Virus record (IMG/VR): IMGVR_UViG_3300042540_001399
Coordinates: 124,001-188,000 of that record
Length of the DNA stretch: 64,000 nucleotides
Strand: one strand, 5' to 3'
Shown here: positions 40,718 to 60,568 of the stretch, piece by piece
How positions within the stretch are numbered: the stretch's first letter is position 1
Layout: every line of letters begins with the position of its first letter
Program-made: the position numbers and the translations under genes
Notes under the pieces: model-generated
What the model saw: the letters and a program-made list of their open reading frames with translations, nothing else
Database searches by the model: none
Told to the model about the DNA's origin: nothing

Positions 40718-41143
40718 ATGAAAAGAATAGTTAGATTAACAGAATCAGATTTGGCTCGTATCGTTAGACGAGTTATCAGGGAAGAAGCTGAAGGTCAAGG
40801 AACAGAAAACAGAGAACAATATTACGAAATGATGAGAAATGGTAAATGTCCTAACGTTGTTTTGTCATACAAAAAAGATGGTGATTGGTTTGATAATCAT
40901 ACAAGTACATCTTTGTTTGACATGGCTTCTCGTGTAAATGGTTTGGACTTAAGTCAAAAACAAGGAAATGGTACCCTTGGTGAGTATCTTCTTATGATGG
41001 TAAGAAAAGGGAAACATGGTTTGAAATGTGGTAGTAACGGATATTACTTTTTGAAACCTGAAGAACAAGAAGTGGCTTCTGATGAGTATGGTATCACTAA
41101 GAAACTAGAAAGAAAATTCCAAGGACAAGGTGGACCAAGATAA
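40718..41143 (+). CDS. Leader-bearing hypothetical protein
   Basis: MKRIVRLTESDLARIVRRVIREE. Confidence 0.65.
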   Translation: MKRIVRLTESDLARIVRRVIREEAEGQGTENREQYYEMMRNGKCPNVVLSYKKDGDWFDNHTSTSLFDMASRVNGLDLSQKQGNGTLGEYLLMMVRKGKHGLKCGSNGYYFLKPEEQEVASDEYGITKKLERKFQGQGGPR

Positions 41144-41704: not shown

Positions 41705-42145
41705 ATGAATAAAGTAAAAAATATTGTAAAAATTATTGTCGAAAGTGTTTCATTACAAGACTCATTAAAAAAAATGATTCGTGATTCAGGAATTGTAACA
41801 GCGGCAAAAGCTGTCGGTGGCATAAATAATGTTACAAAAATATTAGATATAGATTTTGAAAATAAAGACGATGTTGAAATGTTGATCAAAAATTACATTT
41901 ATTTTTGGAATGATAGCGATGTAGAAATTTCCTTTTTAGAAACACGAACATCAAAAAACGGAAACAGAATAATCAATATCCACTTTAATTCAGATAGTAA
42001 TGCTTCAAATATAGAAAGTTGGTTGGCAAGAACCTTGTCTGACGAAATGAATCAATTTTTTCCTTTCAGAATAGGGGTTACGTGGGAACCCTTTTTTGCA
42101 TCTAGAAATGTTAAAATATTTATTGATGCAACAAAACTCAATTGA
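41705..42145 (+). CDS. Leader-bearing protein with KAVGG module
   Basis: KNIVKIIVE; AAKAVGGINNVTKILD; TATTTAT at 41692. Confidence 0.6.
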   Translation: MNKVKNIVKIIVESVSLQDSLKKMIRDSGIVTAAKAVGGINNVTKILDIDFENKDDVEMLIKNYIYFWNDSDVEISFLETRTSKNGNRIINIHFNSDSNASNIESWLARTLSDEMNQFFPFRIGVTWEPFFASRNVKIFIDATKLN

Positions 42146-42233: not shown

Positions 42234-42281
42234 AAAATGGTTTACTATCTATTGTTAGATATAAACAATAAAATTAAAAAA

Positions 42282-43847
42282 ATGAAACAAATTTATCTAA
42301 CAATTTTTTCTGTAATGATGACAGTTTTGTCTTATTCACAGAATTCTTTTTGGACACCTACAACATACAGAGGTGCTTTTCCTATAACAGATAACACACC
42401 ACAAACAGATTGGACTCATGGTTGGTCTAATTGGGATCCACAAAATACACAGTACCCAACAACTCAATTGGTAATTAATACTGATGTAACTACTGATGCA
42501 ACTTGGTCAGGTGTTATAAAATTACAAAACAAAGTTTATATTAAAAATGGTGCAACACTTACAATACTTCCAGGAACTATAATTAGAGGTGATTACAATA
42601 GTCAAGGAACTCTAATTGTAACAAGAGGATCAAAAATTATTGCTGATGGAAATGTGAACCAACCAATCGTCTTTACCTCAAACAATCCTGTCGGAAGTAG
42701 AAACGAAGGAGATTGGGGAGGTTTAGTTCTTTTGGGGCATGCCATTAATAATCAACCTGGTGGTGTTGTTAACATAGAAGGATTACCACCATCTACAAAC
42801 ACTCAACATGGAGGAGGTAATGATAATGATAACTCAGGAGTGTTAAGATATGTAAGAATCGAATTTGCAGGAATTCCACTTGAACCAAACAAAGAAATTA
42901 ACGGATTAACATTCGGTTCAGTTGGAAGTTTAACTACAGTGGATTATGTACAAGTAAGTTTCTGTGGAGACGACTCGTTTGAGTGGTTCGGAGGAACGGT
43001 AAACTGTAAACATTTAATTTCATATTCAACAATAGATGACGATTTTGATACTGACTTTGGATACAGAGGTAAGGTTCAATTCGGTTTGGCGATTAGAAAT
43101 GAAAATTTGTCAGACGCAGCGGGCGACTCAAATTGTTTCGAATCGGATAATGACGCACAGGGTAGCGCTTCTCAACCATTGACGGCACCTATTTTTTCTA
43201 ACTTCACGATTATTGGGGCTAAGGGTGATGGGACTGTAATTCTTCCAGTGGGTGAAAAATTTGAAAAAGCTTTCAGATTAAGAAGAAATACTGCAACTTC
43301 TGTTTTCAACTCAATTGCGACAGGATGGGAAAAAGGATTATCTTTAGAGGGTGTTCCTGTTGAAAATAACATAACTTCAGGTGTTATGAACTTTAATAGT
43401 AACATACTTTCAAACTTTAATACTGGGACAGTTTGTTATACAACAACACCAAACTTTCTTTCATCTTATTTTTCTCAAAACTTGAATGACTCAACTTTAA
43501 CGAATCAAGACATCAATTGGGTTAACCCATTTGTTCAAATAGGATCAACACCTGATTTTAGATTGAATGGGTTCTCGTTTGCGGCAATTGGTGCCAACTT
43601 CCCTTTAAACATATTTGGAAATATTGCGTCAGTCGATGAACTTAATAATGGGTACACAATTTATCCTAACCCGGCAACCAATCAAATTACGGTTAATGAA
43701 AAAACTAATATCGAAGTTATGGATCAAAACGGGAAATTATTAGTAAGTTCTTTTGATAATCAAGTTGAATTGATAAATCTACCAAATGGAGTTTATTTTG
43801 TTAGACTAAACAACTCCAAGGTTGAAAAGTTAATAATTAGAAAATGA
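42282..43847 (+). CDS. Secreted beta-helix-like protein with T9SS (Por) C-terminal sorting domain
   Basis: Signal peptide; GDWGGLVLLG, DNSGVLRYVRIEFAG and DDSFEWFGG; C-terminal IYPNPA...GVYFVRL...KLIIRK. Confidence 0.85.
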   Translation: MKQIYLTIFSVMMTVLSYSQNSFWTPTTYRGAFPITDNTPQTDWTHGWSNWDPQNTQYPTTQLVINTDVTTDATWSGVIKLQNKVYIKNGATLTILPGTIIRGDYNSQGTLIVTRGSKIIADGNVNQPIVFTSNNPVGSRNEGDWGGLVLLGHAINNQPGGVVNIEGLPPSTNTQHGGGNDNDNSGVLRYVRIEFAGIPLEPNKEINGLTFGSVGSLTTVDYVQVSFCGDDSFEWFGGTVNCKHLISYSTIDDDFDTDFGYRGKVQFGLAIRNENLSDAAGDSNCFESDNDAQGSASQPLTAPIFSNFTIIGAKGDGTVILPVGEKFEKAFRLRRNTATSVFNSIATGWEKGLSLEGVPVENNITSGVMNFNSNILSNFNTGTVCYTTTPNFLSSYFSQNLNDSTLTNQDINWVNPFVQIGSTPDFRLNGFSFAAIGANFPLNIFGNIASVDELNNGYTIYPNPATNQITVNEKTNIEVMDQNGKLLVSSFDNQVELINLPNGVYFVRLNNSKVEKLIIRK

Positions 43848-44056: not shown

Positions 44057-44599
44057 ATGACAAAACTTGTAATTGACCCGTCCCACTCTGATTTGGGTTT
44101 TAAAATCAGACACTTAATGGTATCTAATGTAAAAGGTACATTAACTAATTACTCAGGAGGTATGACATATACCGCTGAAGATATGAGTGACGCTCAAGTA
44201 AGATTTGATGCCGAAGTAAACTCTATTTCTACAGGAAATGCTGACCGTGACGCACACTTAAACGCTGAAGACTTCTTCAACACAGAAAGATTCCCAAGAA
44301 TGTATTTTGAATCTACAATGGTAAATGTTGAAAACGGAAAGATGAAAGGTGAAATGACAATCAAAGATACAACAAAAGAAATCGAGTTGGATATTGAGTA
44401 TAACGGTAAGAGTGTTGATCCATGGGGTAATACGAAACATGGGTTTGAAATTACAGGAGTAATCAATCGTTCTGATTTTAATCTTACATGGAACGCACCT
44501 TTAGAAACAGGTGGTGTATTGTTGAGTGATGAAGTTAGATTAACACTTGATGTTCAGATGATGGAAATGGTTGAACAAACTGAAGAGCAACCCGCATAA
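44057..44599 (+). CDS. yceI: YceI family lipid/polyisoprenoid-binding protein
   Basis: IDPSHS..GFKIRHLMVSNVKG, RDAHL and DPWG...INRSDF. Confidence 0.92.
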   Translation: MTKLVIDPSHSDLGFKIRHLMVSNVKGTLTNYSGGMTYTAEDMSDAQVRFDAEVNSISTGNADRDAHLNAEDFFNTERFPRMYFESTMVNVENGKMKGEMTIKDTTKEIELDIEYNGKSVDPWGNTKHGFEITGVINRSDFNLTWNAPLETGGVLLSDEVRLTLDVQMMEMVEQTEEQPA

Positions 44600-44693
44600 T
44601 ATAGTTTTAGAATAACACTAAAATATAGAAATCCCCACCAAAAAAGTGGGGATTTTTCTTTTTTATATCATTTACATTTACTATATTTTGTAT

Positions 44694-45011
44694 ATGTTAA
44701 GACACCAAAACCCAATTCAGATCAATTCTACAACAACAGGATTTGCTTCACCAGCGGAAACATACGTTGACAAACGATTAGATCTAAATGACTTGATTGT
44801 GAAAGATCACTACACAACATTTTATTTTAGATATTCAGGACCATCAGTCTTTGGAATCAATCAAGGTGATACAATAGTAATTGATCGAACTGAGAATCCA
44901 AAAGATGGGGATTTGGTAATCTTAACTGATAAGAATCATTTCAAACTTCGAGAGTTCAAAGGACAAAAAAACTTATGGGGAAAAGTAACATGGGTATTAA
45001 AGAAAATGTAA
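44694..45011 (+). CDS. umuD: UmuD-like (S24) protein, short and degenerate
   Basis: GFASPA...LDLNDL...SGPS...GDTIVIDR; directly upstream of umuC; start moved to 44694. Confidence 0.8.
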   Translation: MLRHQNPIQINSTTTGFASPAETYVDKRLDLNDLIVKDHYTTFYFRYSGPSVFGINQGDTIVIDRTENPKDGDLVILTDKNHFKLREFKGQKNLWGKVTWVLKKM

Positions 45012-46207
45012 AAAAGATTGGAATAATTGATTGTAACAACTTCTATGTTAGTTGTGAAAGATTATTTAATCCTGAATCTATTGGAAGACCAACCGTTGTA
45101 TTATCAAACAATGACGGATGTGTAATTGCCAGATCACAAGAAGCAAAAGACCTTGGAATTAAAATGGGGGAACCATTCTTTAAGAGTCGAGAGTTCATGG
45201 ACCAACATAGATTTTGTGTATACTCATCAAACTACAACCTGTATGGTGATATGTCAGATAGGGTTATGAAAGTAATCTCGGAGTTTGGAAATGATATTGA
45301 GGTATATTCAATTGATGAAGCGTTTGTTGATTTTTCAAACATACCTTTAGAAGATCTCACAGAAACATTAATAGCAATTAAAGAAGAAGTTAGAAAGAAA
45401 GTTGGAATTCCTGTATCAATTGGTGTTGGCCCAAACAAAACTTTAGCTAAACTAACATCCTTTTTAGCTAAACAACAGCTAAACTATAATGGTGTATGTT
45501 CATATTGGGACTTACCAAACTTTAGAAATATGTCTTATGGGATTAATGTTGATGAGGTTTGGGGTATTGGTAGAAAGTGGGCAAAAAAACTAAAAAACAT
45601 TGGGGTAGAATCAGTAGGTCAGTTTATTAACACAAACGAATATACTGTTAGAAAGTTGATGAATATCAATGGAGTAAAAACTCAATTGGAGTTAAAAGAA
45701 ATGTATTGTTTTTTAATTCAAAAGAAGTCCAAACCAAAAAAAAATATTGCATCTACTCGTTCTTTTGGAAAAGATGTACAGGACTTTGATCAACTGGGTG
45801 AAGCGATGTATACATACATTAAAAACGGTGTGAAGAAATTAAGTCAAAACAAGTTGTTTGCAAATAAAGTAACTATATTTGTTTCAGGAAATTATCATAA
45901 AGGTGATAAGTATTACCATTCTAAAACAATCAAACTTCAAAATCCAACTAGAGATCCTGACCTTATTTGGTCACAGATTCACGAACAATATAAAGTTCTT
46001 TGTGACAAATCTGAAAAGTATAAAAAGTGTGGAATAGTATTTAATGAACTTACTCCTGATACAATTATCCAAACTTCTTTATTTAGTGACGATGTTAAAG
46101 TTGTAAACGCCCCACAGAATGAAAACCATGAGTGGGAAATGAAACAAGACTATATTACTCAAAAGTACACAACATCATGGAATGAGTTACCACTTGTTTT
46201 TGTTTGA
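44990..46207 (+). CDS. umuC: Y-family DNA polymerase V catalytic subunit
   Basis: DCNNFYVSCER, SNNDGC, YSIDEAF and STRSFG; C-terminal YTTSWNEL. Confidence 0.93.
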   Translation: MGIKENVKKIGIIDCNNFYVSCERLFNPESIGRPTVVLSNNDGCVIARSQEAKDLGIKMGEPFFKSREFMDQHRFCVYSSNYNLYGDMSDRVMKVISEFGNDIEVYSIDEAFVDFSNIPLEDLTETLIAIKEEVRKKVGIPVSIGVGPNKTLAKLTSFLAKQQLNYNGVCSYWDLPNFRNMSYGINVDEVWGIGRKWAKKLKNIGVESVGQFINTNEYTVRKLMNINGVKTQLELKEMYCFLIQKKSKPKKNIASTRSFGKDVQDFDQLGEAMYTYIKNGVKKLSQNKLFANKVTIFVSGNYHKGDKYYHSKTIKLQNPTRDPDLIWSQIHEQYKVLCDKSEKYKKCGIVFNELTPDTIIQTSLFSDDVKVVNAPQNENHEWEMKQDYITQKYTTSWNELPLVFV

Positions 46208-46224: not shown

Positions 46225-47166
46225 ATGAAAAATTTAATTAGATCAATACTAAATGAAGAATTACACCGTGAAGTTATACATGAATGTACTATAGCTGCGG
46301 TAAGACTCGAAGATGGTGTTGTTTTGGCGAAAAATAGAGATCGTGGATATAAAGCAAGAGTTGAAATCATTCATGAAATAGTCAATGATGTTGAAATGGT
46401 TTATTGGAGAGATGTTGACACTGATTGGAGTGAAGGAATGAATGAATTTGGTATCGGGATTGTAAATTCAAGTTTATTAGTCGTTCAAGACGAAAAGGAA
46501 GGTAAAGGGGTTGAAAAAGAAAGAAAATCTGATGGAAAAGATAAGGACAAACCAGCAAAAAAAAGATTCGCGGCTGACGGTGGTAAAATTAGAAAGGCTC
46601 TAACTTATAAAACTTTACCTAAAGTTATCAAATCAATTATTTCTTTCAGAGGTGAAGATAAAAAAGATGTTGGCCTCAAAGGGGAAACAATAGTGTCCAA
46701 TAATGAAAATGTTTACGTAGTTGAAATGACCGCAAAACATTCCCCTGTGATCAAAAAATTGAAAAAAGAATCAAAATTAGTTGTCAGAACTAATCACGGC
46801 ATTTATCAGAAAAGTGCTGGTTATACCAGTGGTAAAAAAAGAAAATCTTCAGTTTCAAGGATGAAATTGGCTCAGGATCATCTCAAAGATGTAAAAAATG
46901 ATATGGATGTTATTGATGCTATGAAAAAGAAATACAAAAAAGATCCATTTTTGAATCCATACAGAACAAAAAATATGTATCACATGCAAACAACGGGACA
47001 AATTATGATGAATCTTGATAAAAAACTTGTTGTTGTAAGAATGGATAATGAAATGGGTGAATTTGTTGGAATAGAAAACAAACTTCCTAAAGATTATGAA
47101 CCCAAAATCAAAATCAAAGTCGAAAGTGAAAAAACACATGATAACGGTAAAAAACTACCAACTTAA
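46225..47166 (+). CDS. Leader-bearing Ntn (N-terminal Cys nucleophile) hydrolase
   Basis: CTIAA...LAKNRD, EGMNEFGI and RTNH motifs; Cys21 follows I-H-E; TATTTAT at 46213. Confidence 0.75.
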   Translation: MKNLIRSILNEELHREVIHECTIAAVRLEDGVVLAKNRDRGYKARVEIIHEIVNDVEMVYWRDVDTDWSEGMNEFGIGIVNSSLLVVQDEKEGKGVEKERKSDGKDKDKPAKKRFAADGGKIRKALTYKTLPKVIKSIISFRGEDKKDVGLKGETIVSNNENVYVVEMTAKHSPVIKKLKKESKLVVRTNHGIYQKSAGYTSGKKRKSSVSRMKLAQDHLKDVKNDMDVIDAMKKKYKKDPFLNPYRTKNMYHMQTTGQIMMNLDKKLVVVRMDNEMGEFVGIENKLPKDYEPKIKIKVESEKTHDNGKKLPT

Positions 47167-47416
47167 TTTTTGAAACATTCTTGTTTTTTAATTTTTTATT
47201 CTTATCTTTGTCAAACTTATGGAAACACAATTTGAAGATTTAGAAAAAAAAATACGTGAAAAATTTGCTGAAAGACAAAAAAATGTCCCTAGAGTTGTTG
47301 ACCGTTATTTAAGAATCAAATTCAAACAAAAACTTAAACAGTTTACAGGAATAAAACTGAAATAACAAAACCCCACCATCTTGTGGGGTTTTTTATTTAC
47401 TCTAATATTTATCATT

Positions 47417-48304
47417 ATGGGATTAAATGAATCAATATATAGAATAATTAGAGAAGAAACTGAAACCGATAAAAATATTGATGGTGGTAAATTAAAAGTT
47501 TGTTCTCGTAACCCAATTACAGGTTTTTATAGAGATGGATACTGTAGAACAGGTGATGATGATAAAGGTAGTCACACGGTATGTTCTAAGGTGACAAAAG
47601 AATTTCTTAAATTTACAAAGTCACAGGGAAATAATCTTGATATGTTACAACCTGGTGACAAGTGGTGTTTGTGTGCAAAAAGATGGGAAGAAGCAAATGA
47701 AAATGGGGTAGCTCCAAAAATTATCAGAAGTTCCACCAATATTAAAACTTTAGATATTATTAATAGTGTAGACGAAGAATTGGATGAATATGCAAGAACC
47801 TTAAAAAATGCTAGAAGACAAGGTGTTGGTATAAGATTTCCACAATCCGCAATCAAAAGTAATCCAAGTAGATTTAGACCTTCAGTTAGAAAATCAATTT
47901 CAGAAATCTACGACAACTTTAGCTTATTAAGAAGATTAAATAGATCAATTGATGACACAACGATAAAAAGGTTAGTAAAACAAAAAATGTATGACCTTGA
48001 ACCCACTGAATATAATTCCAAATATGGTTACGCGGATGATGTTATTTTTTATGTTACTGATGAATTTATCAAACCTTCAGATGATCCACAATACAGTAAA
48101 ATTTACGATATTTTATACGAATATATTAGAATGAATTTTTCTAATATCATTTATAATTATTGGACGGAAAATCAGTTGGAAAATGATGACGAGTTATATG
48201 AAAACAAAGAAATAACAGAAAGATGTTGGAAGGGATACACTCAAAAAGGTATGAAAACTATGTTTGGTAAAAAGTATCCTAATTGTGTAAAAATAAAGAA
48301 ATGA
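47417..48304 (+). CDS. Modular protein: leader, DUF2237, basic peptide, LRR-motif helical module and CWKGY peptide
   Basis: TGFYRDGYC...HTVC...PGDKWCLCA; C-terminal RCWKGY...PNCVK; start moved to 47417. Confidence 0.75.
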   Translation: MGLNESIYRIIREETETDKNIDGGKLKVCSRNPITGFYRDGYCRTGDDDKGSHTVCSKVTKEFLKFTKSQGNNLDMLQPGDKWCLCAKRWEEANENGVAPKIIRSSTNIKTLDIINSVDEELDEYARTLKNARRQGVGIRFPQSAIKSNPSRFRPSVRKSISEIYDNFSLLRRLNRSIDDTTIKRLVKQKMYDLEPTEYNSKYGYADDVIFYVTDEFIKPSDDPQYSKIYDILYEYIRMNFSNIIYNYWTENQLENDDELYENKEITERCWKGYTQKGMKTMFGKKYPNCVKIKK

Positions 48305-48305
48305 A

Positions 48306-48716
48306 ATGAACCTACAAGAAAACATACAAAGAATCAAAGAAATGATGAAAATAAATCATTCATTTTTGAACGAATCGCAAAGTTTAGGAGTTACCAAAAT
48401 TTTGGGTAGACCATTCCAATTAGTTAAAACTGAAGTACCTTACAAATTTGAAATCCAAGATAACAAAAATGACATGATTAAAATGCAAATAACCGCACCT
48501 AATGGTTCTTTTATTAATATAGATGAAGTTGACCATGTTTTGGAAGAAACTGACGGTGGTGGAAAAAAATTGATTGGTTATAATTTCAAGGGTAAGAGCG
48601 GAACTGTAAAGTTGATAGATGTTCCAAATGTTAAAAGAATTATTGAGTTTGTTGATAATTCAGAAAAAAAATCAATAACAATTTCTTTTGTGACATTCGA
48701 AAAAGTACTTGAATAA
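48306..48716 (+). CDS. MNLQE-leader hypothetical protein
   Basis: Leader repeat followed by an unrelated body. Confidence 0.7.
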   Translation: MNLQENIQRIKEMMKINHSFLNESQSLGVTKILGRPFQLVKTEVPYKFEIQDNKNDMIKMQITAPNGSFINIDEVDHVLEETDGGGKKLIGYNFKGKSGTVKLIDVPNVKRIIEFVDNSEKKSITISFVTFEKVLE

Positions 48717-49198
48717 TGAACCTACAAGAAAACATACAAAGGATAAAAGAAATGATGGGAATAATAGTTGAAAATTACTATGACCCAAAAAAGTTGTATG
48801 TTGACATGGGTGGAGTTTTATTCAAAAAAATGGGTGCCGATGAAGGTGGATCAGGTAATGAAACTGATTATATAGGGAGCGAATTATGGGAAAGTATTAA
48901 AAAATATTACCCAATAATTCTTACTTCCACAGGATCCAAAAATATAGAAAATTCAGAAAAAATAAAAACCAAACAAGTTCAAGACTATTTAAACCCAATT
49001 CCAAAAATTGAATTTGTTGTCTTTGGGGCTGATAAAAAAACTTTTGCCACCACAACTCAAGACGATTTAGTTTATCCAAATATTTTAATAGATGATTCTG
49101 AAACAAACATAAACGGATGGGTAAACAATGGAGGTATTGGAATACTTCATAAAAATAATCAAACAACTTTGGAACAATTAAAAAGTTATATCAAATGA
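48716..49198 (+). CDS. MNLQE-leader HAD/5'(3')-deoxyribonucleotidase-like protein
   Basis: LYVDMGGV, ILTS, KK and ILIDD...GGIGILH. Confidence 0.7.
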   Translation: MNLQENIQRIKEMMGIIVENYYDPKKLYVDMGGVLFKKMGADEGGSGNETDYIGSELWESIKKYYPIILTSTGSKNIENSEKIKTKQVQDYLNPIPKIEFVVFGADKKTFATTTQDDLVYPNILIDDSETNINGWVNNGGIGILHKNNQTTLEQLKSYIK

Positions 49199-49950
49199 AC
49201 CTACAAGAAAACATACCGGTACATATAAAAAGAAGAATTCATTTAATTGATAAGGTAATAGATAATTTGTTACCCAATATGTATCCGTGTGATTATAATT
49301 CTTATGACCATTTTGTGGAAGGAGTATTAGATGAAATTAGATGGTTTTTAATTGATGTAGAAGAATTACAACGTATTGAAAGATCGGATATTGAAAACTA
49401 CATTCTTGATTACAAATATGATGAATTAACTGAATACTTCAATGAAAGGTGTATTGTTTTAAAAAATGATAAACTACAAGAAAACATAAGAAGACTTTCA
49501 AGAGAAAATTCACTAAAGAATGATTTGATGAATCTAATTGATAATGTTGGTTTAAAAAAAGCGTCAAAGGCTGTGGGAGGGATGGTTAGATTATTAAAAA
49601 TATTAGATCTTGATCAACAAGAAATTAATAATTTTATTTACCAGTATCTAAAAGAAGAGTTTTATCCTGATTATAATTGGGGACCTGAAATACATGATTT
49701 TTATAAAAAAGAAATTGAACAGTATGGTATATATGATTTTTTGATTAATGATGATCCGGCATATTCATATTTAGGTGAGTGGGATGGATATGAATATCTA
49801 TACACACTATCAATTGGTAAACTTGTCAGGGATGAACTTACAAAACTGTTTGGGGATAAGTGGATTCCAATTTTTAAGAAATGGTTTGAAGAAAACTCAG
49901 GTCTTGAAGTAAGAGAAATAGACTTAAATAATAAATTTTTAGTGTATTGA
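49195..49950 (+). CDS. MNLQE-leader two-module protein (RR/YPC module and KAVGG module)
   Basis: Internal second leader KLQENIRRLSRE. Confidence 0.7.
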   Translation: MNLQENIPVHIKRRIHLIDKVIDNLLPNMYPCDYNSYDHFVEGVLDEIRWFLIDVEELQRIERSDIENYILDYKYDELTEYFNERCIVLKNDKLQENIRRLSRENSLKNDLMNLIDNVGLKKASKAVGGMVRLLKILDLDQQEINNFIYQYLKEEFYPDYNWGPEIHDFYKKEIEQYGIYDFLINDDPAYSYLGEWDGYEYLYTLSIGKLVRDELTKLFGDKWIPIFKKWFEENSGLEVREIDLNNKFLVY

Positions 49951-50297
49951 TTGAGGTGAACAAAAAAGAATTTATAAAAAGACTATTAAGGGAAAATAAT
50001 TCAAATCCAATTAATCCAATTTTAAGAAGATTGGATGTCGTTGATTGGTTGGTTGAGTTTTCAGTAAGAGAAATAGAAAGACAATATAATGGTATATGTA
50101 AAGTAAGAACCCCTGAAAACTTTTTGGAAATTGTAATAGAAAAGACTGGGGATGGAATGTATTGGGATTATTTTTCTGACACACTAGATGATGATTCAGA
50201 AGAGTGGGCGGAAATGTATAGATTCATATCCATATATGTGTATAATAAATTTGGTGATAAGTTAAGAGAACATTTTCACACACAGTGTGGAGATTAA
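49947..50297 (+). CDS. LRR-motif helical module protein
   Basis: NPILRRLD...C...C; exact start uncertain. Confidence 0.6.
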   Translation: MIEVNKKEFIKRLLRENNSNPINPILRRLDVVDWLVEFSVREIERQYNGICKVRTPENFLEIVIEKTGDGMYWDYFSDTLDDDSEEWAEMYRFISIYVYNKFGDKLREHFHTQCGD

Positions 50298-50311
50298 CAT
50301 AATTATATAAT

Positions 50312-51094
50312 ATGAACCTACAGGAAAACATATTAAGAATTAAACAAATGATGGGACTTGTTACAGAAGTTACTAATCCATACAAAGTTGAATGGTTGGA
50401 ACCTACACAAGAATACTTTACACAAGAGTTAAGTGAGTTATTGGGCAATCCTATTAGGTTTACAGACAAAGAGTTTTTCAACCCTGAAAACTATGATACG
50501 GTTTATAACATTATGCCACACACATTCAAAACGATTGCTGAATTTTCTAAAGGTGAATATGTGGAAGGCGAAGATAAAATTAAGGACATACTTCTAAATC
50601 AAAATATAATATCTCTTTTAAAAGAAGAAGAAAGATGGAATGAATTGAAAAACATTTTAATGAATGACCCGCAATCAATCCAAGAAGGTTATGATTTCTT
50701 CAGTCGTGGTCAAATGACGATATGGAAAGGAACTAACCCTGAAACAGGTGAACATATTGATAATGTAAACAACACTGATTACATGGGTGAATTAACAAGT
50801 TTTCTTGAACCATTAAAAAAAACCGTATCTTCCAAAATGTCATCACATTTGAAAAAAGTTGGTGACGGAGAAGGTAATAAAGATTTACACGCTTTTGCAG
50901 GAAACATCGACCAATATAGAGAATTTGCAAAGAAAAGTGAAACAAGAAAATTACCAGCACCATTTGTTGTTAAATACTACACAAAGAAAAATGATAAAGA
51001 TTATGTTTTAATAGGTGGATTCAAAAGAAGTTCAATCGCATTACAAATGGGTATTGAACCAATAAAAGTTTGGTTAATAGATTTAACAATATGA
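50312..51094 (+). CDS. MNLQE-leader protein with C-terminal ParB/Srx-like motif
   Basis: LPAPFV...LIGGFKRSSIA. Confidence 0.55.
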   Translation: MNLQENILRIKQMMGLVTEVTNPYKVEWLEPTQEYFTQELSELLGNPIRFTDKEFFNPENYDTVYNIMPHTFKTIAEFSKGEYVEGEDKIKDILLNQNIISLLKEEERWNELKNILMNDPQSIQEGYDFFSRGQMTIWKGTNPETGEHIDNVNNTDYMGELTSFLEPLKKTVSSKMSSHLKKVGDGEGNKDLHAFAGNIDQYREFAKKSETRKLPAPFVVKYYTKKNDKDYVLIGGFKRSSIALQMGIEPIKVWLIDLTI

Positions 51095-51840
51095 ACCTAC
51101 AAGAAAACATACAAAGGATTAAACAAATGATGGGGATCATTAACGAGAATATAGATGATGTTCTTGACAAAATGAGCCGAGGTGAAGAATTGTCACAGGA
51201 AGATAAAAATAAAATGTCAGTATTTCAAAAACATCTTTTTTCAGGAAAAAAAGAAAATGATTTCAAATATCACAGAGTATCTGAGTTAAATATTGCAGAA
51301 CCTAATTCAGAAAATCATGTAAATGAATCACAAATTCTTGTACACTACGATTCTAATACTAATATCAAACCAGAATACATGGTAAAAAAAATTGCACTTA
51401 TTTTAAATAAATCAAACATTGATTGTGTAGTTGGGTATTCTTTTAGATTGTTTACATTTGCCAATGGGTATTTTGTTAAGGTAAATGAGTACCAAGTCGA
51501 AAACGCAATTTATGTTTTGAATAAAAACGGGTTTAGTACGGAAATGAATCCAATGTATGATCTTTCAAATAACTATGACACAAAAAGTAACCGAGAAGAA
51601 AAACTACAAAACTTTTCTGAAAATTCAGATATAATAATTTTGAGTGACTCTGAAATTTATCAAAATTTAAATCTTACTGATACACAATTTAATGATAGAT
51701 TAGAAAAACTGTTAAAAAAATTTGGTATAAATAACTTCTTTATAACAAAAAATAAAATAACCATTTCTGATAAATCAAAAATTGACGATGTGATTAATTA
51801 TTTGAATACCAAAGGATACAACACAAGAAGATCAAGATAA
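51091..51840 (+). CDS. MNLQE-leader hypothetical protein
   Basis: True start at 51091 (ATGA overlap with previous stop). Confidence 0.7.
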   Translation: MNLQENIQRIKQMMGIINENIDDVLDKMSRGEELSQEDKNKMSVFQKHLFSGKKENDFKYHRVSELNIAEPNSENHVNESQILVHYDSNTNIKPEYMVKKIALILNKSNIDCVVGYSFRLFTFANGYFVKVNEYQVENAIYVLNKNGFSTEMNPMYDLSNNYDTKSNREEKLQNFSENSDIIILSDSEIYQNLNLTDTQFNDRLEKLLKKFGINNFFITKNKITISDKSKIDDVINYLNTKGYNTRRSR

Positions 51841-51841
51841 T

Positions 51842-52249
51842 ATGAATTTACAAGAAAACATATCAAGGATTAAACAAATGATGGGACTTCTTACAGAAGG
51901 ACTTCATGACACATATTGGCAAAATGAAGATGGTGACAAAATAACTCTAATTGATTTATTAAATGCAACACAAGACATACCTGTAGAAGAATTTTCCGTA
52001 GAAGAATTAAAACCGCATCTATTAACTTGGGATGGGGATGAAGATGAGGTTAAAAAAATAGAAAGTGCCAATTTACAATACCCAATATTAATATTCGTAA
52101 ATGACGATGGTGAATTTATATCAATTATAGATGGTCATCACCGAGCACAAAAAGCGGTGAGAAAAGGGTTAGAAACAATTAAGGCGAAGGTAATACCAAT
52201 TAATTCTTTACCTAAAAACATAAGAAGAGTATTTTCACATATGAACTAA
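51842..52249 (+). CDS. MNLQE-leader ParB/Sulfiredoxin-like protein
   Basis: ANLQYPILI...IIDGHHRAQKA. Confidence 0.8.
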   Translation: MNLQENISRIKQMMGLLTEGLHDTYWQNEDGDKITLIDLLNATQDIPVEEFSVEELKPHLLTWDGDEDEVKKIESANLQYPILIFVNDDGEFISIIDGHHRAQKAVRKGLETIKAKVIPINSLPKNIRRVFSHMN

Positions 52250-52250
52250 T

Positions 52251-53531
52251 ATGAACCTACAAGAATCCATAAGAAGAATATTAAGGGAAGATTTGTTAAA
52301 TAAATCAAAATTCTTTCTAAGAAGAATTAATTTAGATGAGGTTAAAAAATTACTTCCAATCAACGCAGAACAAGTACATGGTGAAACAAAAAGTTATGAG
52401 CAATTCAAGTATGAATTAACTTTAAGAGCCGTGGAGGCAATTATGTGGAATGATTATGAACTCGGGTGGGAAGATCTACCAGAACAAGAGGAAATAGAAT
52501 TTGTTAATGAAGTTTCCAACATGTTTAATAAAACAATCAAAAAGTTATATAATTCTTATAGTGGAAGAATATTAAGGGAAGAAGATTATTCTCCGGCGGG
52601 TAAAGAAATAATACCAAATAAAATTGTGATCCACAAGTCCAATCCGATCTTCAGAAATAAGATAATGGAAAATGGTCTTAAAGTAAGGGCAGGAGAATGT
52701 TACAAAATATATGTTGGTTATGGTGTTAAGTGTAAACCTGCAATTTTTGCAACCAACTCAACGAACAAAAGAGCATGGTTTGATTCAACATACGACGATG
52801 ATATATGGGAAATAAATACAGAAATGATTCCTGATGTAAAGTGGTATAAAGATAGACACTTTGAGTCAAGGTCAAAACATATTGTTACGTTTCAAGACAT
52901 ACCAAAAGAAGCAATAACTTTAAAATATGAAGGAAGTGGAAGTGGAGATGTAGAAAAGTGGGATAAAGATTCGCCAAACATAGTTAGAGAATCCCAAATA
53001 GACCCTTATCTTCTAAGAAGATTTCATGAGTTCGACGACACTTTCAAATTGGTATCATCAAATGTTTATCCATGTGATTTCAGACATCCACAACATTATT
53101 GGAATTACACGATAGAAAGAGTACTGGAAGCTATTTATTTTAATTTTTTCTATGAAACTAAATCCGAATTAAATTGGGAGTCCCTTTCTGATGAAATTCT
53201 TTATCTTCTAAATAGAACATATTATGATGAATTAGTTTCAGACTGGGAATCCAAGTGTAATAATAATATTCATGAAGATTTTTCACCTGAGTTTTTAAGA
53301 AGAATAACTATAATTGATACGTTAATTGACGCAACCCTTTCTTCTATGTACCCATGTGAATATAGTTCTGAAAAAGCTTTTCTTCGTGGTTTATACGACG
53401 AATTATATTGGTCATTTATAGGGGAAGACTTAAAAATTATTGACTATTCAGATATTATTGATTTTATAGAAGAAAACAGAAAAGAAGACATATATGATTA
53501 TTGGGACGAATATTGTGTTCGATTATCATAA
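52251..53531 (+). CDS. Four-module protein: LRR module, ADP-ribosyltransferase-like domain, two more LRR modules
   Basis: VIHKS...IMENGL...IFAT...DIPKEAI; modules separated by ILREE, VRE and IHE. Confidence 0.6.
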   Translation: MNLQESIRRILREDLLNKSKFFLRRINLDEVKKLLPINAEQVHGETKSYEQFKYELTLRAVEAIMWNDYELGWEDLPEQEEIEFVNEVSNMFNKTIKKLYNSYSGRILREEDYSPAGKEIIPNKIVIHKSNPIFRNKIMENGLKVRAGECYKIYVGYGVKCKPAIFATNSTNKRAWFDSTYDDDIWEINTEMIPDVKWYKDRHFESRSKHIVTFQDIPKEAITLKYEGSGSGDVEKWDKDSPNIVRESQIDPYLLRRFHEFDDTFKLVSSNVYPCDFRHPQHYWNYTIERVLEAIYFNFFYETKSELNWESLSDEILYLLNRTYYDELVSDWESKCNNNIHEDFSPEFLRRITIIDTLIDATLSSMYPCEYSSEKAFLRGLYDELYWSFIGEDLKIIDYSDIIDFIEENRKEDIYDYWDEYCVRLS

Positions 53532-53532
53532 T

Positions 53533-53610
53533 TAACTATGGTTTTCAATTACTCGGTTCATAGTCCTTCACTTCGTTCGGAATTCACCTCATAATTTAAT
53601 ACCATAGTTA
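53533..53610 (-). other. Hairpin with three tandem G.A pairs and a C-GAA-G triloop
   Basis: Minus strand: TAACTATGGT...GA-GGT-GA-AT-TCC-GA-AC-GAA-GT-GA-A-GGA-CT-AT-GA-ACC-GA...ACCATAGTTA. Confidence 0.7.
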
Positions 53611-53650
53611 TATTTATTATACATAAAGGATAACAAATCAAAAGACAACA

Positions 53651-53974
53651 ATGTCACTTAAAAAAATAATTAGAAAAGTATTGATTCAAGAATCGGGAAA
53701 CATAGATCCTTACATACTTCGAAGACTTGATTTAGATAAGTTCAATGATCTCTTAGATAAAGGAAAAGTATATATGTTTTATGAATCCAATTCATTAGAA
53801 GAATTCAAATGGAAGTTAGTTACGGCAACATTAGAAAACTATCATTACTACAAGTATGAAACTGATATAGATACAAGTGATGGATATTTCGATCAAACAA
53901 TACAAAGTCTTATCAACTTATTTGAGCCCAAGTTAGAAACTATTTATAACAGATTAAAAAATGAAAGAGGATGA
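53651..53974 (+). CDS. Leader plus LRR-motif module
   Basis: KKIIRKVLIQE; IDPYILRRLD. Confidence 0.65.
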   Translation: MSLKKIIRKVLIQESGNIDPYILRRLDLDKFNDLLDKGKVYMFYESNSLEEFKWKLVTATLENYHYYKYETDIDTSDGYFDQTIQSLINLFEPKLETIYNRLKNERG

Positions 53975-54594
53975 ACAAACAATTAAATCCATTTTTGTTA
54001 CGTAGAGTTGATCCTAAAGTGTTAGACGCCGAATTTGAGGATTGTTTAGATACTGCCACAAACATGTACAACAGGGGAAAAGACAAAAGTTCGGTATCAT
54101 TACCTCAGTTTAGAAATAGAGTCATATCCATGTTGATAGACTCAATTCACTATGATATACATAGCTCTGTTCCAGAAGAACTTCAGTGGTATGATGATGT
54201 CTTTTATATGTTAAAAGATTATTATGGGGGTAAGATTAAAAAAAGATTAGATCAATTAAATTCCAAAACTATAAATGAATCCAAGTTACAAATTTATATG
54301 TTAAGAAGAATAGATGTTGTTGAACATTACCTTAACAATTTAAGTTCAAAAGATGTTTGTATACACTGGTCAGACGATGAGGCTTTAGAATATTCTAGTC
54401 AAATACTTTCAGACATGTCAAGAATTATTATTGATGAACTACACTATGTTGATTCAGAATCATATGTAGACAAGTATGATGAAATATATCAATTTTTAAT
54501 TGATCTTGATTATCCGAAAAGAATAGTAGACTTCTTTTATGATTCATTAAAAACTTGTGAAGATAGACATAGATATAAATTTAGAAAACCATAA
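53971..54594 (+). CDS. Two LRR-motif modules
   Basis: NPFLLRRVD and INE-SKLQIYMLRRID. Confidence 0.65.
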   Translation: MNKQLNPFLLRRVDPKVLDAEFEDCLDTATNMYNRGKDKSSVSLPQFRNRVISMLIDSIHYDIHSSVPEELQWYDDVFYMLKDYYGGKIKKRLDQLNSKTINESKLQIYMLRRIDVVEHYLNNLSSKDVCIHWSDDEALEYSSQILSDMSRIIIDELHYVDSESYVDKYDEIYQFLIDLDYPKRIVDFFYDSLKTCEDRHRYKFRKP

Positions 54595-59172: not shown

Positions 59173-59347
59173 TATGGTTTGTGGGTAGGGTCAAAATGAT
59201 ATGTGTTCTACAATTAGAGACTGAATAGTCAGATAATTGATCGTGATAAAGTAATGGTCCCAAACTCATTATTCAAAGACTCAAAAGTCATTTGATTAAA
59301 ATTTAAAACTCTTGATGACATAATTTTAATCCTCGAAACAAACTATA
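59173..59347 (+). ncRNA. Candidate 175-nt structured RNA in 3' UTR
   Basis: UAUGGUUUGU/ACAAACUAUA and AGGGUCAAAAU..UAUGU/ACAUAAUUUUAAUCCU long-range stems; terminator at 59351-59378. Confidence 0.6.
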
Positions 59348-59400
59348 TGGAACCCTCACAGAAATGTGGGGGTTTTTTAGTTGTAAGATATTTATTTCAT

Positions 59401-60021
59401 ATGAAAATCATTGTTACCGAATCACAGTTAAGACGATACCTTGTTAAAGAATCTACAGAAGAATCTGTTGATTTGGAAATGAATCAATCAATAGACACAA
59501 CAATAAATGAACTACACCCCAACGTTATTCCAAAATTCCAAAAATTAGTAAACGCGTGGAAAGCTAAGGGATACAAATTTAAAATTACCGACGGATTTAG
59601 AACATTTGATGAACAAGAAAACGAATTCCAAAAAGGAACTAGTAAAGCTCGTGGTGGTCTTGGGATTCACAATTATGGTCATGCGATTGATGTTTATATG
59701 TGGAATGGAAAAAATTGGGATAAACCATCTGACGCAATGTTAAAAGTTGCCGTGAACAATGGTTTTGAATCATACGGTCTTTCTTGGGGTTGGGATTTTT
59801 ATCACGTACAATATACAAAAGAATTCACAGGTCAAAAAGGTGGTGATGCTAATTTCATAAAAAAATACGGAAAACAATTAATCGATTCTTATTCCAAAAT
59901 TTCATCTGAAGACAAAAAGAAAATGAAAAAAAATATTGACGCTAAATTTAAACAGGGGAATGGCGGTTACAAAGATTTAATTAATAAATGGTTGGACTTA
60001 TATAGCCCCTTCAAAGATTAA
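59401..60021 (+). CDS. Leader-bearing M15 family peptidoglycan peptidase
   Basis: GFRTFDEQ, HNYGHAID and WDFYHVQ; MKIIVTESQL; start moved to 59401. Confidence 0.8.
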   Translation: MKIIVTESQLRRYLVKESTEESVDLEMNQSIDTTINELHPNVIPKFQKLVNAWKAKGYKFKITDGFRTFDEQENEFQKGTSKARGGLGIHNYGHAIDVYMWNGKNWDKPSDAMLKVAVNNGFESYGLSWGWDFYHVQYTKEFTGQKGGDANFIKKYGKQLIDSYSKISSEDKKKMKKNIDAKFKQGNGGYKDLINKWLDLYSPFKD

Positions 60022-60268: not shown

Positions 60269-60568
60269 ATGGTGAATATACCCACATTTTTACTCAGAAG
60301 ATTTGACGGTCACAAGATAGAAAAGACGATGAAAAAAATTGCCGGTCAAGTTTATTTTGGTACTGACAACAAACAAGAATTCAAAGATGAACTTGTTTAT
60401 AGAACTCTTTCTAATTATTTTTGGACAAAATATAATTTCGATATTACACAACTCAGTGACGATGAATTGATATCTATGAATGAATTAATTTTTAAAATCT
60501 TTGAACCACTTATGAATGTATATTATTCAGGTCTTAAAAAAAATTACCCGAGTCCAAAAACAAATTAA
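60269..60568 (+). CDS. LRR-motif module protein
   Basis: IPTFLLRRFD; TATTTAT at 60257. Confidence 0.65.
   Translation: MVNIPTFLLRRFDGHKIEKTMKKIAGQVYFGTDNKQEFKDELVYRTLSNYFWTKYNFDITQLSDDELISMNELIFKIFEPLMNVYYSGLKKNYPSPKTN

What the first reader, a model, noticed from the sequence alone, without database searches (positions are those of the whole stretch)
47417..53531. Polyprotein-like ORFs with internal leader copies at module junctions
Seen: in 52251 the 19-nt string GAAGAATATTAAGGGAAGA (RILRE) occurs at 52273 and again at 52564, just before a new domain; later modules follow VRE and IHE. 49195 has an internal KLQENIRRLSRE. 47417 strings together DUF2237, LDE|basic peptide, ISE|helical module and ITE|CWKGY peptide. 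The same modules occur as stand-alone genes nearby. Inference: gene fusions through leader DNA are tolerated because the head protease separates the modules again, giving phage polyproteins.
Basis: partly seen in the sequence, partly recalled or inferred. Interest (0 to 1): 0.75.

Follow-up and report, generated by a model that had tools for sequence, protein, structure and literature searches.

The report
Leader-tagged cargo polyproteins in jumbo phage
A 291-kb T4-like lake phage has a cluster of genes that all begin with a short leader peptide ending in the cutting motif of the phage's own head protease. Three longer genes are fusions of such units with a leader remnant at every joint, which suggests, but does not prove, that they are cut apart inside the capsid like a polyprotein.

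Summary
The window belongs to a 290,887-bp T4-like jumbo phage from lake water that encodes a gp21-type (S77) prohead protease. In T4 this protease cuts after L/I-x-E. Seven neighbouring genes start with MNLQE(N/S)I leaders. ORFs 47417, 49195 and 52251 are strings of modules that occur as separate, leader-headed genes in this genome and in relatives. Every homology breakpoint that is also a predicted domain boundary sits on a leader remnant that keeps [ILV]xE, and AlphaFold places its only inter-domain low-confidence segments there. In relatives the same junction motif recurs: 25 of 25 and 25 of 30 internal module starts, 123 of 123 CW-peptide copies, and [IL]xES five-fold over shuffles in proteins up to 873 aa. 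Leader DNA keeps the same codon at 94% of identical residues between genomes, against 64-73% in an orthologous module, so it looks like a recombination substrate. One module has an ADP-ribosyltransferase fold, as does T4's packaged Alt. Fusion through leaders is well supported. Capsid targeting and cleavage are inferred only, because no proteomics exists. It is best read as an expanded, cassette-like variant of the T4 capsid-targeting-sequence and internal-protein system.

The parts
47367..47392 (+). Intrinsic terminator that closes the upstream unit. No further terminator-like site on the + strand until about 55.8-55.9 kb, so 47417-54594 reads as one operon.
47417..47458 (+). N-terminal leader of ORF 47417 (MGLNESIYRIIREE), with LNE5 and IRE13.
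47471..47767 (+). DUF2237 domain (aa 19-117). The leader lies outside the domain.
47789..47896 (+). Basic peptide after LDE124. Present after DUF2237 in L004 and L008, absent in P0326 and P0332, so it is a separable piece.
47897..48202 (+). ISE163 followed by a helical xxLRRxxxxD-type module. Homology breakpoint at aa 161-163.
48212..48301 (+). ITE268 followed by the basic CWKGY...NCVK peptide (aa 269-295).
48306..49198 (+). Two leader-headed single-unit genes. The second (48716-49198) is deoxyribonucleotidase-like.
49195..49467 (+). ORF 49195 unit 1 (aa 1-91): short leader MNLQE plus a helical module. It is a paralogue of module 4 of ORF 52251.
49468..49506 (+). Internal leader DKLQENIRRLSRE (aa 92-104), with no start codon. 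It is the only inter-domain low-confidence segment of the model.
49507..49947 (+). ORF 49195 unit 2 (aa 105-251). Normally a stand-alone ~160-aa leader-headed gene.
49947..52249 (+). Four more leader-headed genes (49947, 50312, 51091, 51842). The last is ParB-like.
52251..52289 (+). N-terminal leader of ORF 52251 (MNLQESIRRILRE), with LQE5 and LRE13. Holds the first copy of the 19-mer.
52290..52565 (+). Module 1 (helical). Stand-alone in L007:5777-6112 and in window 53651-53974.
52566..52583 (+). Junction 1, RILREE. A truncated leader and the second copy of the 19-mer. pLDDT below 50.
52584..52949 (+). Module 2, an ADP-ribosyltransferase-fold domain (Tpt1/KptA- and DarT-like). Mostly a stand-alone 125-145-aa gene elsewhere.
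52950..53000 (+). Junction 2 (aa 234-250), containing NIVRE|S. pLDDT below 50.
53001..53264 (+). Module 3 (helical, LLRR type).
53265..53279 (+). Junction 3, NNIHE|D. It aligns to the MNLQEN start of ORF 49195. pLDDT below 50.
53280..53528 (+). Module 4 (helical). 37.5% identical to unit 1 of ORF 49195.
53651..54594 (+). Stand-alone and two-module relatives of the helical modules (53651-53974 and 53971-54594).

Best explanation
The short N-terminal leaders are capsid-targeting propeptides of the T4 kind. Each is an amphipathic, mostly basic helix that would dock the protein to the acidic scaffold core of the prohead, and it ends in the L/I-x-E site of the phage's gp21-type protease. Because many unrelated cargo genes carry nearly the same leader DNA, recombination and small deletions at leaders shuffle cassettes and sometimes fuse neighbours in frame. 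In the fused ORFs (47417, 49195, 52251) the first leader would take the whole chain into the prohead. The protease would then cut at the leader remnants between modules and release separate cargo pieces, among them an ADP-ribosyltransferase-fold enzyme and a small basic Cys-containing peptide, which leave with the DNA at infection. Shown: the module architecture, the fusions at leaders, motif retention at junctions, linker prediction at junctions, presence of the protease, and nucleotide-level homogenisation of leaders. Inferred: packaging, cleavage and ejection.
For: The genome encodes Peptidase_S77 (80.7 bits; phrog_207; T4 gp21 5JBL at E 1e-13) next to terminase, portal, an acidic scaffold-like protein and a T4-type capsid protein. 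T4 gp21 cuts after L/I-x-E, removes propeptides of 7-65 residues, and a 10-residue capsid-targeting sequence suffices for packaging (PMC9026906; PMC3012670). All leader families in this genome end in [IL]xE. The same module carries different leaders in different lineages, all ending in [IL]xE. The leader lies outside DUF2237. Homology breakpoints fall on leader remnants holding [ILV]xE in 6 of 7 cases; the seventh is not a domain boundary. AlphaFold inter-domain segments with pLDDT below 50 are residues 106-112, 234-250 and 340-343 of ORF 52251 and residues 88-104 of ORF 49195, which are the junctions. In relatives, 25/25 internal junctions before the second unit of 49195 keep the motif across 9 upstream contexts, as do 25/30 before module 2 and 123/123 before the CW peptide, which is followed by VNE|S when internal. 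In 51 proteins of 300 aa or more, [IL]xES occurs 89 times against 17.6 +/- 4.1 in shuffles. The P1 Glu of the internal leader is the most conserved column of a 50-sequence alignment (100%). Module 2 has an ART fold, like T4's packaged Alt. A CW-peptide protein of cyanophage S-SCSM1 is annotated as a virion protein in a genome whose virion was analysed by mass spectrometry. Downstream of the leader, [IL]xE is over-represented less than in the rest of the proteome (observed/expected 1.06 against 1.26).
Against: There is no proteomic or biochemical evidence for this phage or any close relative, and no cultured relative carries these modules. The complex prediction for protease plus junction peptide gave no answer. 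[IL]xE is short and common: 17% of internal 15-residue windows contain one. Junction motifs could persist simply because junctions descend from leaders. The counts over database proteins are not phylogenetically independent. In ORF 49195 the second site has decayed to SRE. About 48 genes carry such leaders by eye, far more than T4's handful, and some (a deoxyribonucleotidase-like enzyme) are not obvious capsid cargo. The depletion signal is weak, about 2 sd.
Confidence: 0.55

Rival explanations
1. The N-terminal leaders are capsid-targeting propeptides, but the fused ORFs stay intact as ordinary multi-domain cargo proteins. On this reading the internal leader remnants are just flexible linkers inherited from the fusion event.
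For: Junction motifs can be explained by descent from leaders. Some junctions are degenerate: SRE104 in ORF 49195, and a few relatives lack [ILV]xE before module 2. Fused arrangements are stable down to about 45% identity, as expected for a functional multi-domain protein.
Against: Where most of the leader has been lost, the [IL]xE|S core is what remains (INES, LNES, IQES, IRES). The P1 Glu is invariant. The CW peptide is bracketed by such sites on both sides and occurs in tandem. [IL]xES is five-fold over shuffles.
Confidence: 0.25
2. The leader is not a capsid tag at all. It would be an expression or recombination cassette end (an unstructured, A-rich start region that favours translation in a Bacteroidota host), or a tag for some other destination. 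Its [IL]xE content would then be a by-product of an amphipathic helix.
For: Leader DNA is conserved beyond the needs of the peptide: 94% same codon against 64-73% in an orthologous module. It is unstructured as RNA (z 0.07-0.83). Its 41-mer is about 100-fold deeper than its flanks in one of the lake-water/aquatic runs examined. The host is probably a Bacteroidota (T9SS sorting domain), a group that by general knowledge makes little use of Shine-Dalgarno sites. Some tagged enzymes look metabolic.
Against: Synonymous differences between copies that keep the same amino acids show selection on the peptide. Diverged lineages keep the helix pattern and the terminal Glu with different codons and residues. 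Internal copies without a start codon stay conserved. Five unrelated leader families all end in [IL]xE in a genome that has a Glu-specific head protease.
Confidence: 0.15
3. The long ORFs are assembly or frameshift artefacts that join separate genes.
For: Leaders are repeats that break metagenome assemblies, and contigs end at them.
Against: Identical ORFs occur in two other assemblies (L002, L003). A 92%-identical variant of ORF 49195 has the same internal leader. Contigs of two independent runs span the internal leader without a difference. Hundreds of database proteins show the same kind of fusion.
Confidence: 0.02

Closest known systems
T4 internal proteins IPI/IPII/IPIII and Alt, with their capsid targeting sequence, processed by the gp21 prohead protease
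   Same: Both use a short N-terminal propeptide ending in L/I-x-E on otherwise unrelated proteins, in a phage with a gp21-family protease. In both, the cargo includes an ADP-ribosyltransferase-fold enzyme, and the tag is shared by a diverse, fast-changing gene set.
   Different: The leaders share no sequence homology with the T4 tag. There are about 48 tagged genes instead of a handful, and several leader families coexist in one genome. Multi-module ORFs carry internal leader copies. Nothing has been shown experimentally.
Modular shuffling in T4-type genomes through conserved flanking sequences (PeSL cassettes, PMC2839356; polymorphic T-even internal-protein locus)
   Same: Short conserved DNA at gene borders acts as a recombination substrate, so the cassette content differs between close relatives.
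   Different: Here the conserved DNA is coding (the leader itself), not an intergenic promoter-stem-loop. No RNA structure was found. Recombination also yields in-frame fusions.
Ejection and inner-body proteins of giant phages phiKZ, 201phi2-1 and SPN3US, cut by diverged gp21 homologues
   Same: Many head-internal proteins are involved. Cleavage follows Glu in a three-residue motif, and some proteins are cut into several fragments.
   Different: Those phages use an S/A/G-x-E type of site (from my own knowledge; the paper read states only cleavage after Glu in a short motif) and have paralogue families rather than a shared portable leader. No cassette-like fusion and fission through leader DNA has been described for them, as far as the searches went.
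Viral polyproteins (for example of picornaviruses), cut by a virus-encoded protease
   Same: It would work alike: one ORF, several independent modules, and a protease motif at each joint.
   Different: There is no evolutionary relation. Here the modules also exist as separate genes, fusion is facultative, and cleavage would take place inside the prohead.

Membership tests
T4-type capsid-targeted, protease-trimmed head cargo | The phage encodes a gp21-family (Peptidase_S77) prohead protease with a T4-type head module | tested here: met
T4-type capsid-targeted, protease-trimmed head cargo | A short N-terminal propeptide ending in L/I-x-E | tested here: met
   motif definition from PMC9026906
T4-type capsid-targeted, protease-trimmed head cargo | The tag is a separable add-on shared by unrelated proteins | tested here: met
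   The leader lies outside DUF2237, and the same module carries different leaders
T4-type capsid-targeted, protease-trimmed head cargo | The protein is present in virions and its N-terminus is trimmed at the site | not testable with these tools
   No proteomics exists for this phage. The only indirect hint is a CW-peptide protein annotated as a virion protein in S-SCSM1.
T4-type capsid-targeted, protease-trimmed head cargo | The protease recognises the leader or junction | tested here: inconclusive
   Complex prediction gave no answer
Protease-processed polyprotein | One ORF made of modules that fold independently and exist as separate genes elsewhere | tested here: met
Protease-processed polyprotein | A protease-site motif at the inter-module joints, above background | tested here: met
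Protease-processed polyprotein | Release of the modules by cleavage | not testable with these tools
   Needs mass spectrometry or an in vitro assay
PeSL-type mobile regulatory cassette | An intergenic promoter plus stem-loop flanking the shuffled genes | tested here: not met
   The leaders are coding and unstructured. Promoter-like sites are not above shuffles, and there is no Rfam match.

The most novel reading that the evidence does not exclude
Aquatic T4-like phages may run a cassette system in which one ~40-nt leader serves three purposes at once. It would be a recombination joint for swapping and fusing cargo genes, an address tag for the prohead, and a cutting site for the head protease. 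Arrays of host-takeover effectors, up to about 870 aa and eight modules, could then be built as polyproteins, cut apart in the capsid and injected. This would be a protein-level counterpart of integron cassettes.
Probability: 0.35. Interest if true: 0.8.

Novelty: new variant of a known kind. Interest (0 to 1): 0.65.

Why it matters
If the leaders are capsid tags, this phage group packages dozens of different proteins, and their identity can be read directly from the genome. That would give a ready catalogue of candidate injected effectors, such as an ADP-ribosyltransferase fold, a ParB-like nuclease, an Ntn-hydrolase-like protein, an M15 peptidase and a basic Cys peptide. It would also give a simple rule for finding such effectors in metagenomes. 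The fused forms would be, as far as the searches here went, the first described facultative polyproteins of tailed phages. They would show how a very short protease motif makes gene fusion harmless. The widespread CW peptide (more than 1,700 proteins, including cultured cyanophages) makes the idea testable with virion mass-spectrometry data of the kind already collected for S-SCSM1.

Tried and rejected
- **Protease-peptide complex:** Complex prediction on the protease plus residues 96-125 of ORF 52251 scored 0.00 with no verdict. This is not evidence either way.
- **Cultured relatives:** Megablast of the region, and tblastn of module 2 and of unit 2 of ORF 49195, against cultured phages found nothing.
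- **Literature:** Searches for the leader and CW strings gave no paper.
- **T4 late promoter:** TATAAATA occurs 21 times against 13.5 +/- 3.5 in shuffles and is not placed before the leader genes, so it is uninformative.
- **Other regulatory signals:** Sigma-70-like sites are not above shuffles.
- **RNA structure or known RNA family at the leaders:** none found. This rejects a PeSL-like stem-loop.
- **Alignments:** Two MAFFT alignments that mixed single-module pieces misplaced module 1 (A2 and A4) and were discarded in favour of A3.
- **Boundary in ORF 49195 near aa 139:** rejected. The model and the homologues show one unit from 105 to 251.
- **Internal translation starts at junctions:** rejected, because there is no start codon there.
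- **Supplement of the S-SCSM1 paper:** it did not let me confirm that ORF 29 itself was among the proteins detected by mass spectrometry.
Full report
**What the window is.** The window is bases 124001-188000 of a single 290,887-bp virus record (31% G+C, CheckV 99% complete). The genome has a T4-type head module outside the window:
- large terminase, portal and head maturation protease (Peptidase_S77 at 80.7 bits; phrog_207; T4 gp21 structure 5JBL at E 1e-13);
- a very acidic 585-aa scaffold-like protein;
- a gp23-type major capsid protein.

The nearest cultured capsid proteins are those of Flavobacterium phage immuto and Microcystis phage Mel-JY01, at 41-43% identity. A gene in the window carries a type IX secretion sorting domain, so a Bacteroidota host is likely. 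The sequence is held almost complete by at least 16 lake-water/freshwater metagenome runs.

**Checking the observation.**
- The 19-mer occurs only at 52273 and 52564, both in frame in ORF 52251-53531.
- Seven consecutive genes start with MNLQE(N/S)I, and one internal copy lies in ORF 49195 at 49468-49506. The motif occurs nowhere else in the genome.
- ORF 47417 (its true start is the ATG, because the TTG at 47381 lies inside a terminator hairpin) has DUF2237 at residues 19-117, then LDE124, ISE163 and ITE268 before a basic CWKGY peptide.
- No terminator-like site occurs on the + strand between 47392 and about 55.8 kb, so these genes form one operon.

**The long ORFs are strings of units that are separate genes elsewhere.**
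- Within the genome, residues 1-101 of ORF 52251 match the 107-aa gene at 53651 and the 99-aa gene at 60269. Residues 339-425 match residues 2-89 of ORF 49195. Residues 92-149 of ORF 49195 match the start of the 146-aa gene at 41705.
- In related viral contigs, module 1 of 52251 is a 111-aa gene (L007). Module 2 is a 146-aa or 134-aa gene with its own leader (L005, L006), or heads a different fusion (L004).
- In L008, unit 1 of 49195 is joined through a full internal leader to module 1 of 52251. A ParB-like unit is joined through another internal leader to DUF2237.
- More distant contigs carry the same modules behind a different leader, MKYIITES.
- A search of 1.8 billion representatives found 396 relatives of ORF 52251. 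In them module 2 sits at the start, in the middle or at the end of proteins of 100-873 aa.
- For ORF 49195, the start points of homologue alignments pile up at residue 1 (46 cases) and at residues 90-94 (47 cases). Residues 92-251 are normally a ~160-aa gene whose Met-leader aligns to the internal leader.
- The fusions are not assembly errors. Identical ORFs occur in two other assemblies, a 92%-identical variant keeps the same junction, and contigs from two independent runs span it without a difference.

**The joints.**
- Breakpoints were defined only by where homologues begin or end. They lie at residues 106, 244-250 and 339 of ORF 52251, at 92 and 139 of ORF 49195, and at 161 and 265 of ORF 47417.
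- Six of these seven are followed within five residues by [ILV]xE: LRE110, VRE247, IHE342, LQE96, ISE163 and ITE268.
- AlphaFold models built on alignments A3 and A5 put their only inter-domain segments with pLDDT below 50 at 106-112, 234-250 and 340-343 of ORF 52251, and at 88-104 of ORF 49195. These are the leader remnants. Residues 105-251 of ORF 49195 fold as one unit, so the seventh breakpoint is not a domain boundary.
- Within the two modelled ORFs, 4 of 18 non-leader [ILV]xE sites fall in the 45 linker residues, where about 1.2 would be expected (my calculation).

**The joints in relatives.** These counts are not phylogenetically independent, but they cover many different upstream contexts.

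| Comparison | Result |
|---|---|
| Internal starts of unit 2 of ORF 49195 that keep [IL]xE | 25 of 25, in nine upstream contexts |
| Internal starts of module 2 with [ILV]xE zero to two residues before the conserved YSPAGKE | 25 of 30 |
| CW-peptide copies preceded by [ILV]xE plus one residue | 123 of 123 |
| [IL]xES in 51 proteins of 300 aa or more | 89 observed against 17.6 +/- 4.1 in shuffles |
| Ser after [IL]xE in those proteins | 3.8-fold enriched |

- Where the rest of the leader has decayed, what remains is INES, LNES, IQES or IRES.
- When the CW peptide is internal it is followed by ...KKKR-VNE|S.
- In a 50-sequence alignment, the Glu that ends the leader is the best conserved column (100% of 48 sequences). 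The first Glu is 92% conserved.

**What the leaders are.**
- About 48 genes of this genome (picked by eye) start with one of several amphipathic leaders: MNLQENIxRIKxMMG..., MNLQESIRRILREE or MKxIIRxILxEE, MKIIITESQ, MKRIVRLTESDL...RVIxE, and MExNRFKQLLES.... All of them end in [IL]xE.
- In the 140-220 kb stretch, 49% of ORFs have [IL]xE in residues 2-16, against 17% of internal windows.
- Selection acts on the peptide. Copies differ at synonymous sites while keeping the residues, and diverged lineages keep the pattern with other residues.
- The DNA is also homogenised. Between genomes, 94% of identical residues in the type-B leader use the same codon, against 64-73% in the orthologous body of module 2.
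- In one of the runs examined (X17) the 200-base bin holding this leader is about 100-fold deeper than its flanks, and many contigs match only those ~41 bases.
- The leader RNA is not structured and matches no Rfam family.

**Link to the protease.** In T4, gp21 cuts after L/I-x-E, removes propeptides of 7-65 residues from head proteins, and chops core proteins into fragments. A 10-residue capsid-targeting sequence is enough to package foreign proteins. The internal proteins are a diverse set that shares only that tag, and Alt, a packaged ADP-ribosyltransferase, is trimmed at both ends (PMC9026906; PMC3012670). Here:
- By eye, the capsid protein has SFLINE|A where T4 has SFLTE|A. The phmmer alignment starts right after that point, at our A61.
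- INE is also the commonest junction triplet.
- Module 2 has the Tpt1/KptA- and DarT-like ADP-ribosyltransferase fold.
- Other tagged proteins are ParB-like, deoxyribonucleotidase-like, weakly Ntn-hydrolase-like, and an M15 D-Ala-D-Ala carboxypeptidase. A carboxypeptidase of that kind was detected in the virion of cyanophage S-SCSM1.
- Among cultured phages the CW peptide occurs only in T4-like cyanophages (86 records). In S-SCSM1 it lies in a 518-aa product annotated as a virion protein, though I could not confirm that entry in the supplement.
- Downstream of the leader, [IL]xE is barely over-represented in tagged proteins (observed/expected 1.06), while it is 1.26 in the rest of the proteome. 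[IL]xD and [IL]xK behave alike in both sets. This is a weak signal, about 2 sd, in the direction expected if stray sites are avoided.

**Verdict.**
- Fusion and fission of cargo genes through leader DNA is well supported.
- Capsid targeting by the leaders, and cleavage of the fused ORFs by the head protease, is the best-supported mechanism (about 0.55), but it remains an inference.
- The main rival (about 0.25) is that the fusions stay uncut. A smaller rival (about 0.15) is that the leader serves expression or some other destination.
- The system is a new, expanded and cassette-like variant of the T4 capsid-targeting-sequence and internal-protein system. No paper describing it was found with the searches made.

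Noticed in passing
window 46225-47166: A leader-headed protein with a weak match to the Ntn-hydrolase family AAT (22.5 bits, just under the cut-off). The sequence reads ...VIHE followed directly by Cys, so a cut after IHE would expose an N-terminal Cys nucleophile.
   Followed up: partly
window 59347-60021: A VanY / Peptidase_M15 D-Ala-D-Ala carboxypeptidase preceded by an MKIIVTESQ leader. A carboxypeptidase of this kind was found in the virion proteome of cyanophage S-SCSM1 (PMC9602691).
   Followed up: partly
window 48221-48301, and proteins P0262-P0381: The basic peptide CWxGYxxKGMKTMFGKxYPNCVK occurs in more than 1,700 database proteins, at C-termini, internally or in tandem. It is always preceded by [ILV]xE. 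Among cultured phages it is found only in T4-like cyanophages. It has no Pfam family.
   Followed up: partly
window 52584-52949: Module 2 of ORF 52251 has an ADP-ribosyltransferase fold nearest to Tpt1/KptA and DarT (DUF4433). It has no Pfam match, and the family is large (152 and 396 hits in the two searches).
   Followed up: partly
window 52251-52291 and 48132-48331: In lake-water/aquatic runs these short stretches (the type-B leader, and the CW peptide plus a leader) are far deeper than their flanks (up to 968 against 5-10). Contigs break or diverge exactly there, so the leader is shared by many genes and phages in the community.
   Followed up: partly
window 44057-46207: A YceI-like protein (44057), then a Peptidase_S24 (UmuD/LexA-like) gene (44694) and a Y-family polymerase of the impB/mucB/samB family (44975). 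This is an SOS-type mutagenesis pair carried by a phage.
   Followed up: yes
window 42237-43847: A 536-aa protein with a signal-like start and a type IX secretion C-terminal sorting domain, pointing to a Bacteroidota host.
   Followed up: yes
L020:7574-8287 (genome 257574-258290, outside the window): The prohead protease itself has LIE at residues 14-16. This recalls the LIE-9 near the N-terminus of T4 gp21, which has been proposed as an autocleavage site (PMC9026906).
   Followed up: no
genome 1199-7471 (outside the window): Very long ORFs with highly repetitive, Met/Gln/Glu/Leu/Val-rich translations. They look like another frame of collagen-like triplet repeats.
   Followed up: no
window 40718-41143; genome 193286, 224728, 240736: Four genes share the longer leader MK(R/K)I(V/I)RLTESDL.RIV.RVI.E, with two [IL]xE sites. 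In the window copy it heads a 141-aa protein of unknown function.
   Followed up: no
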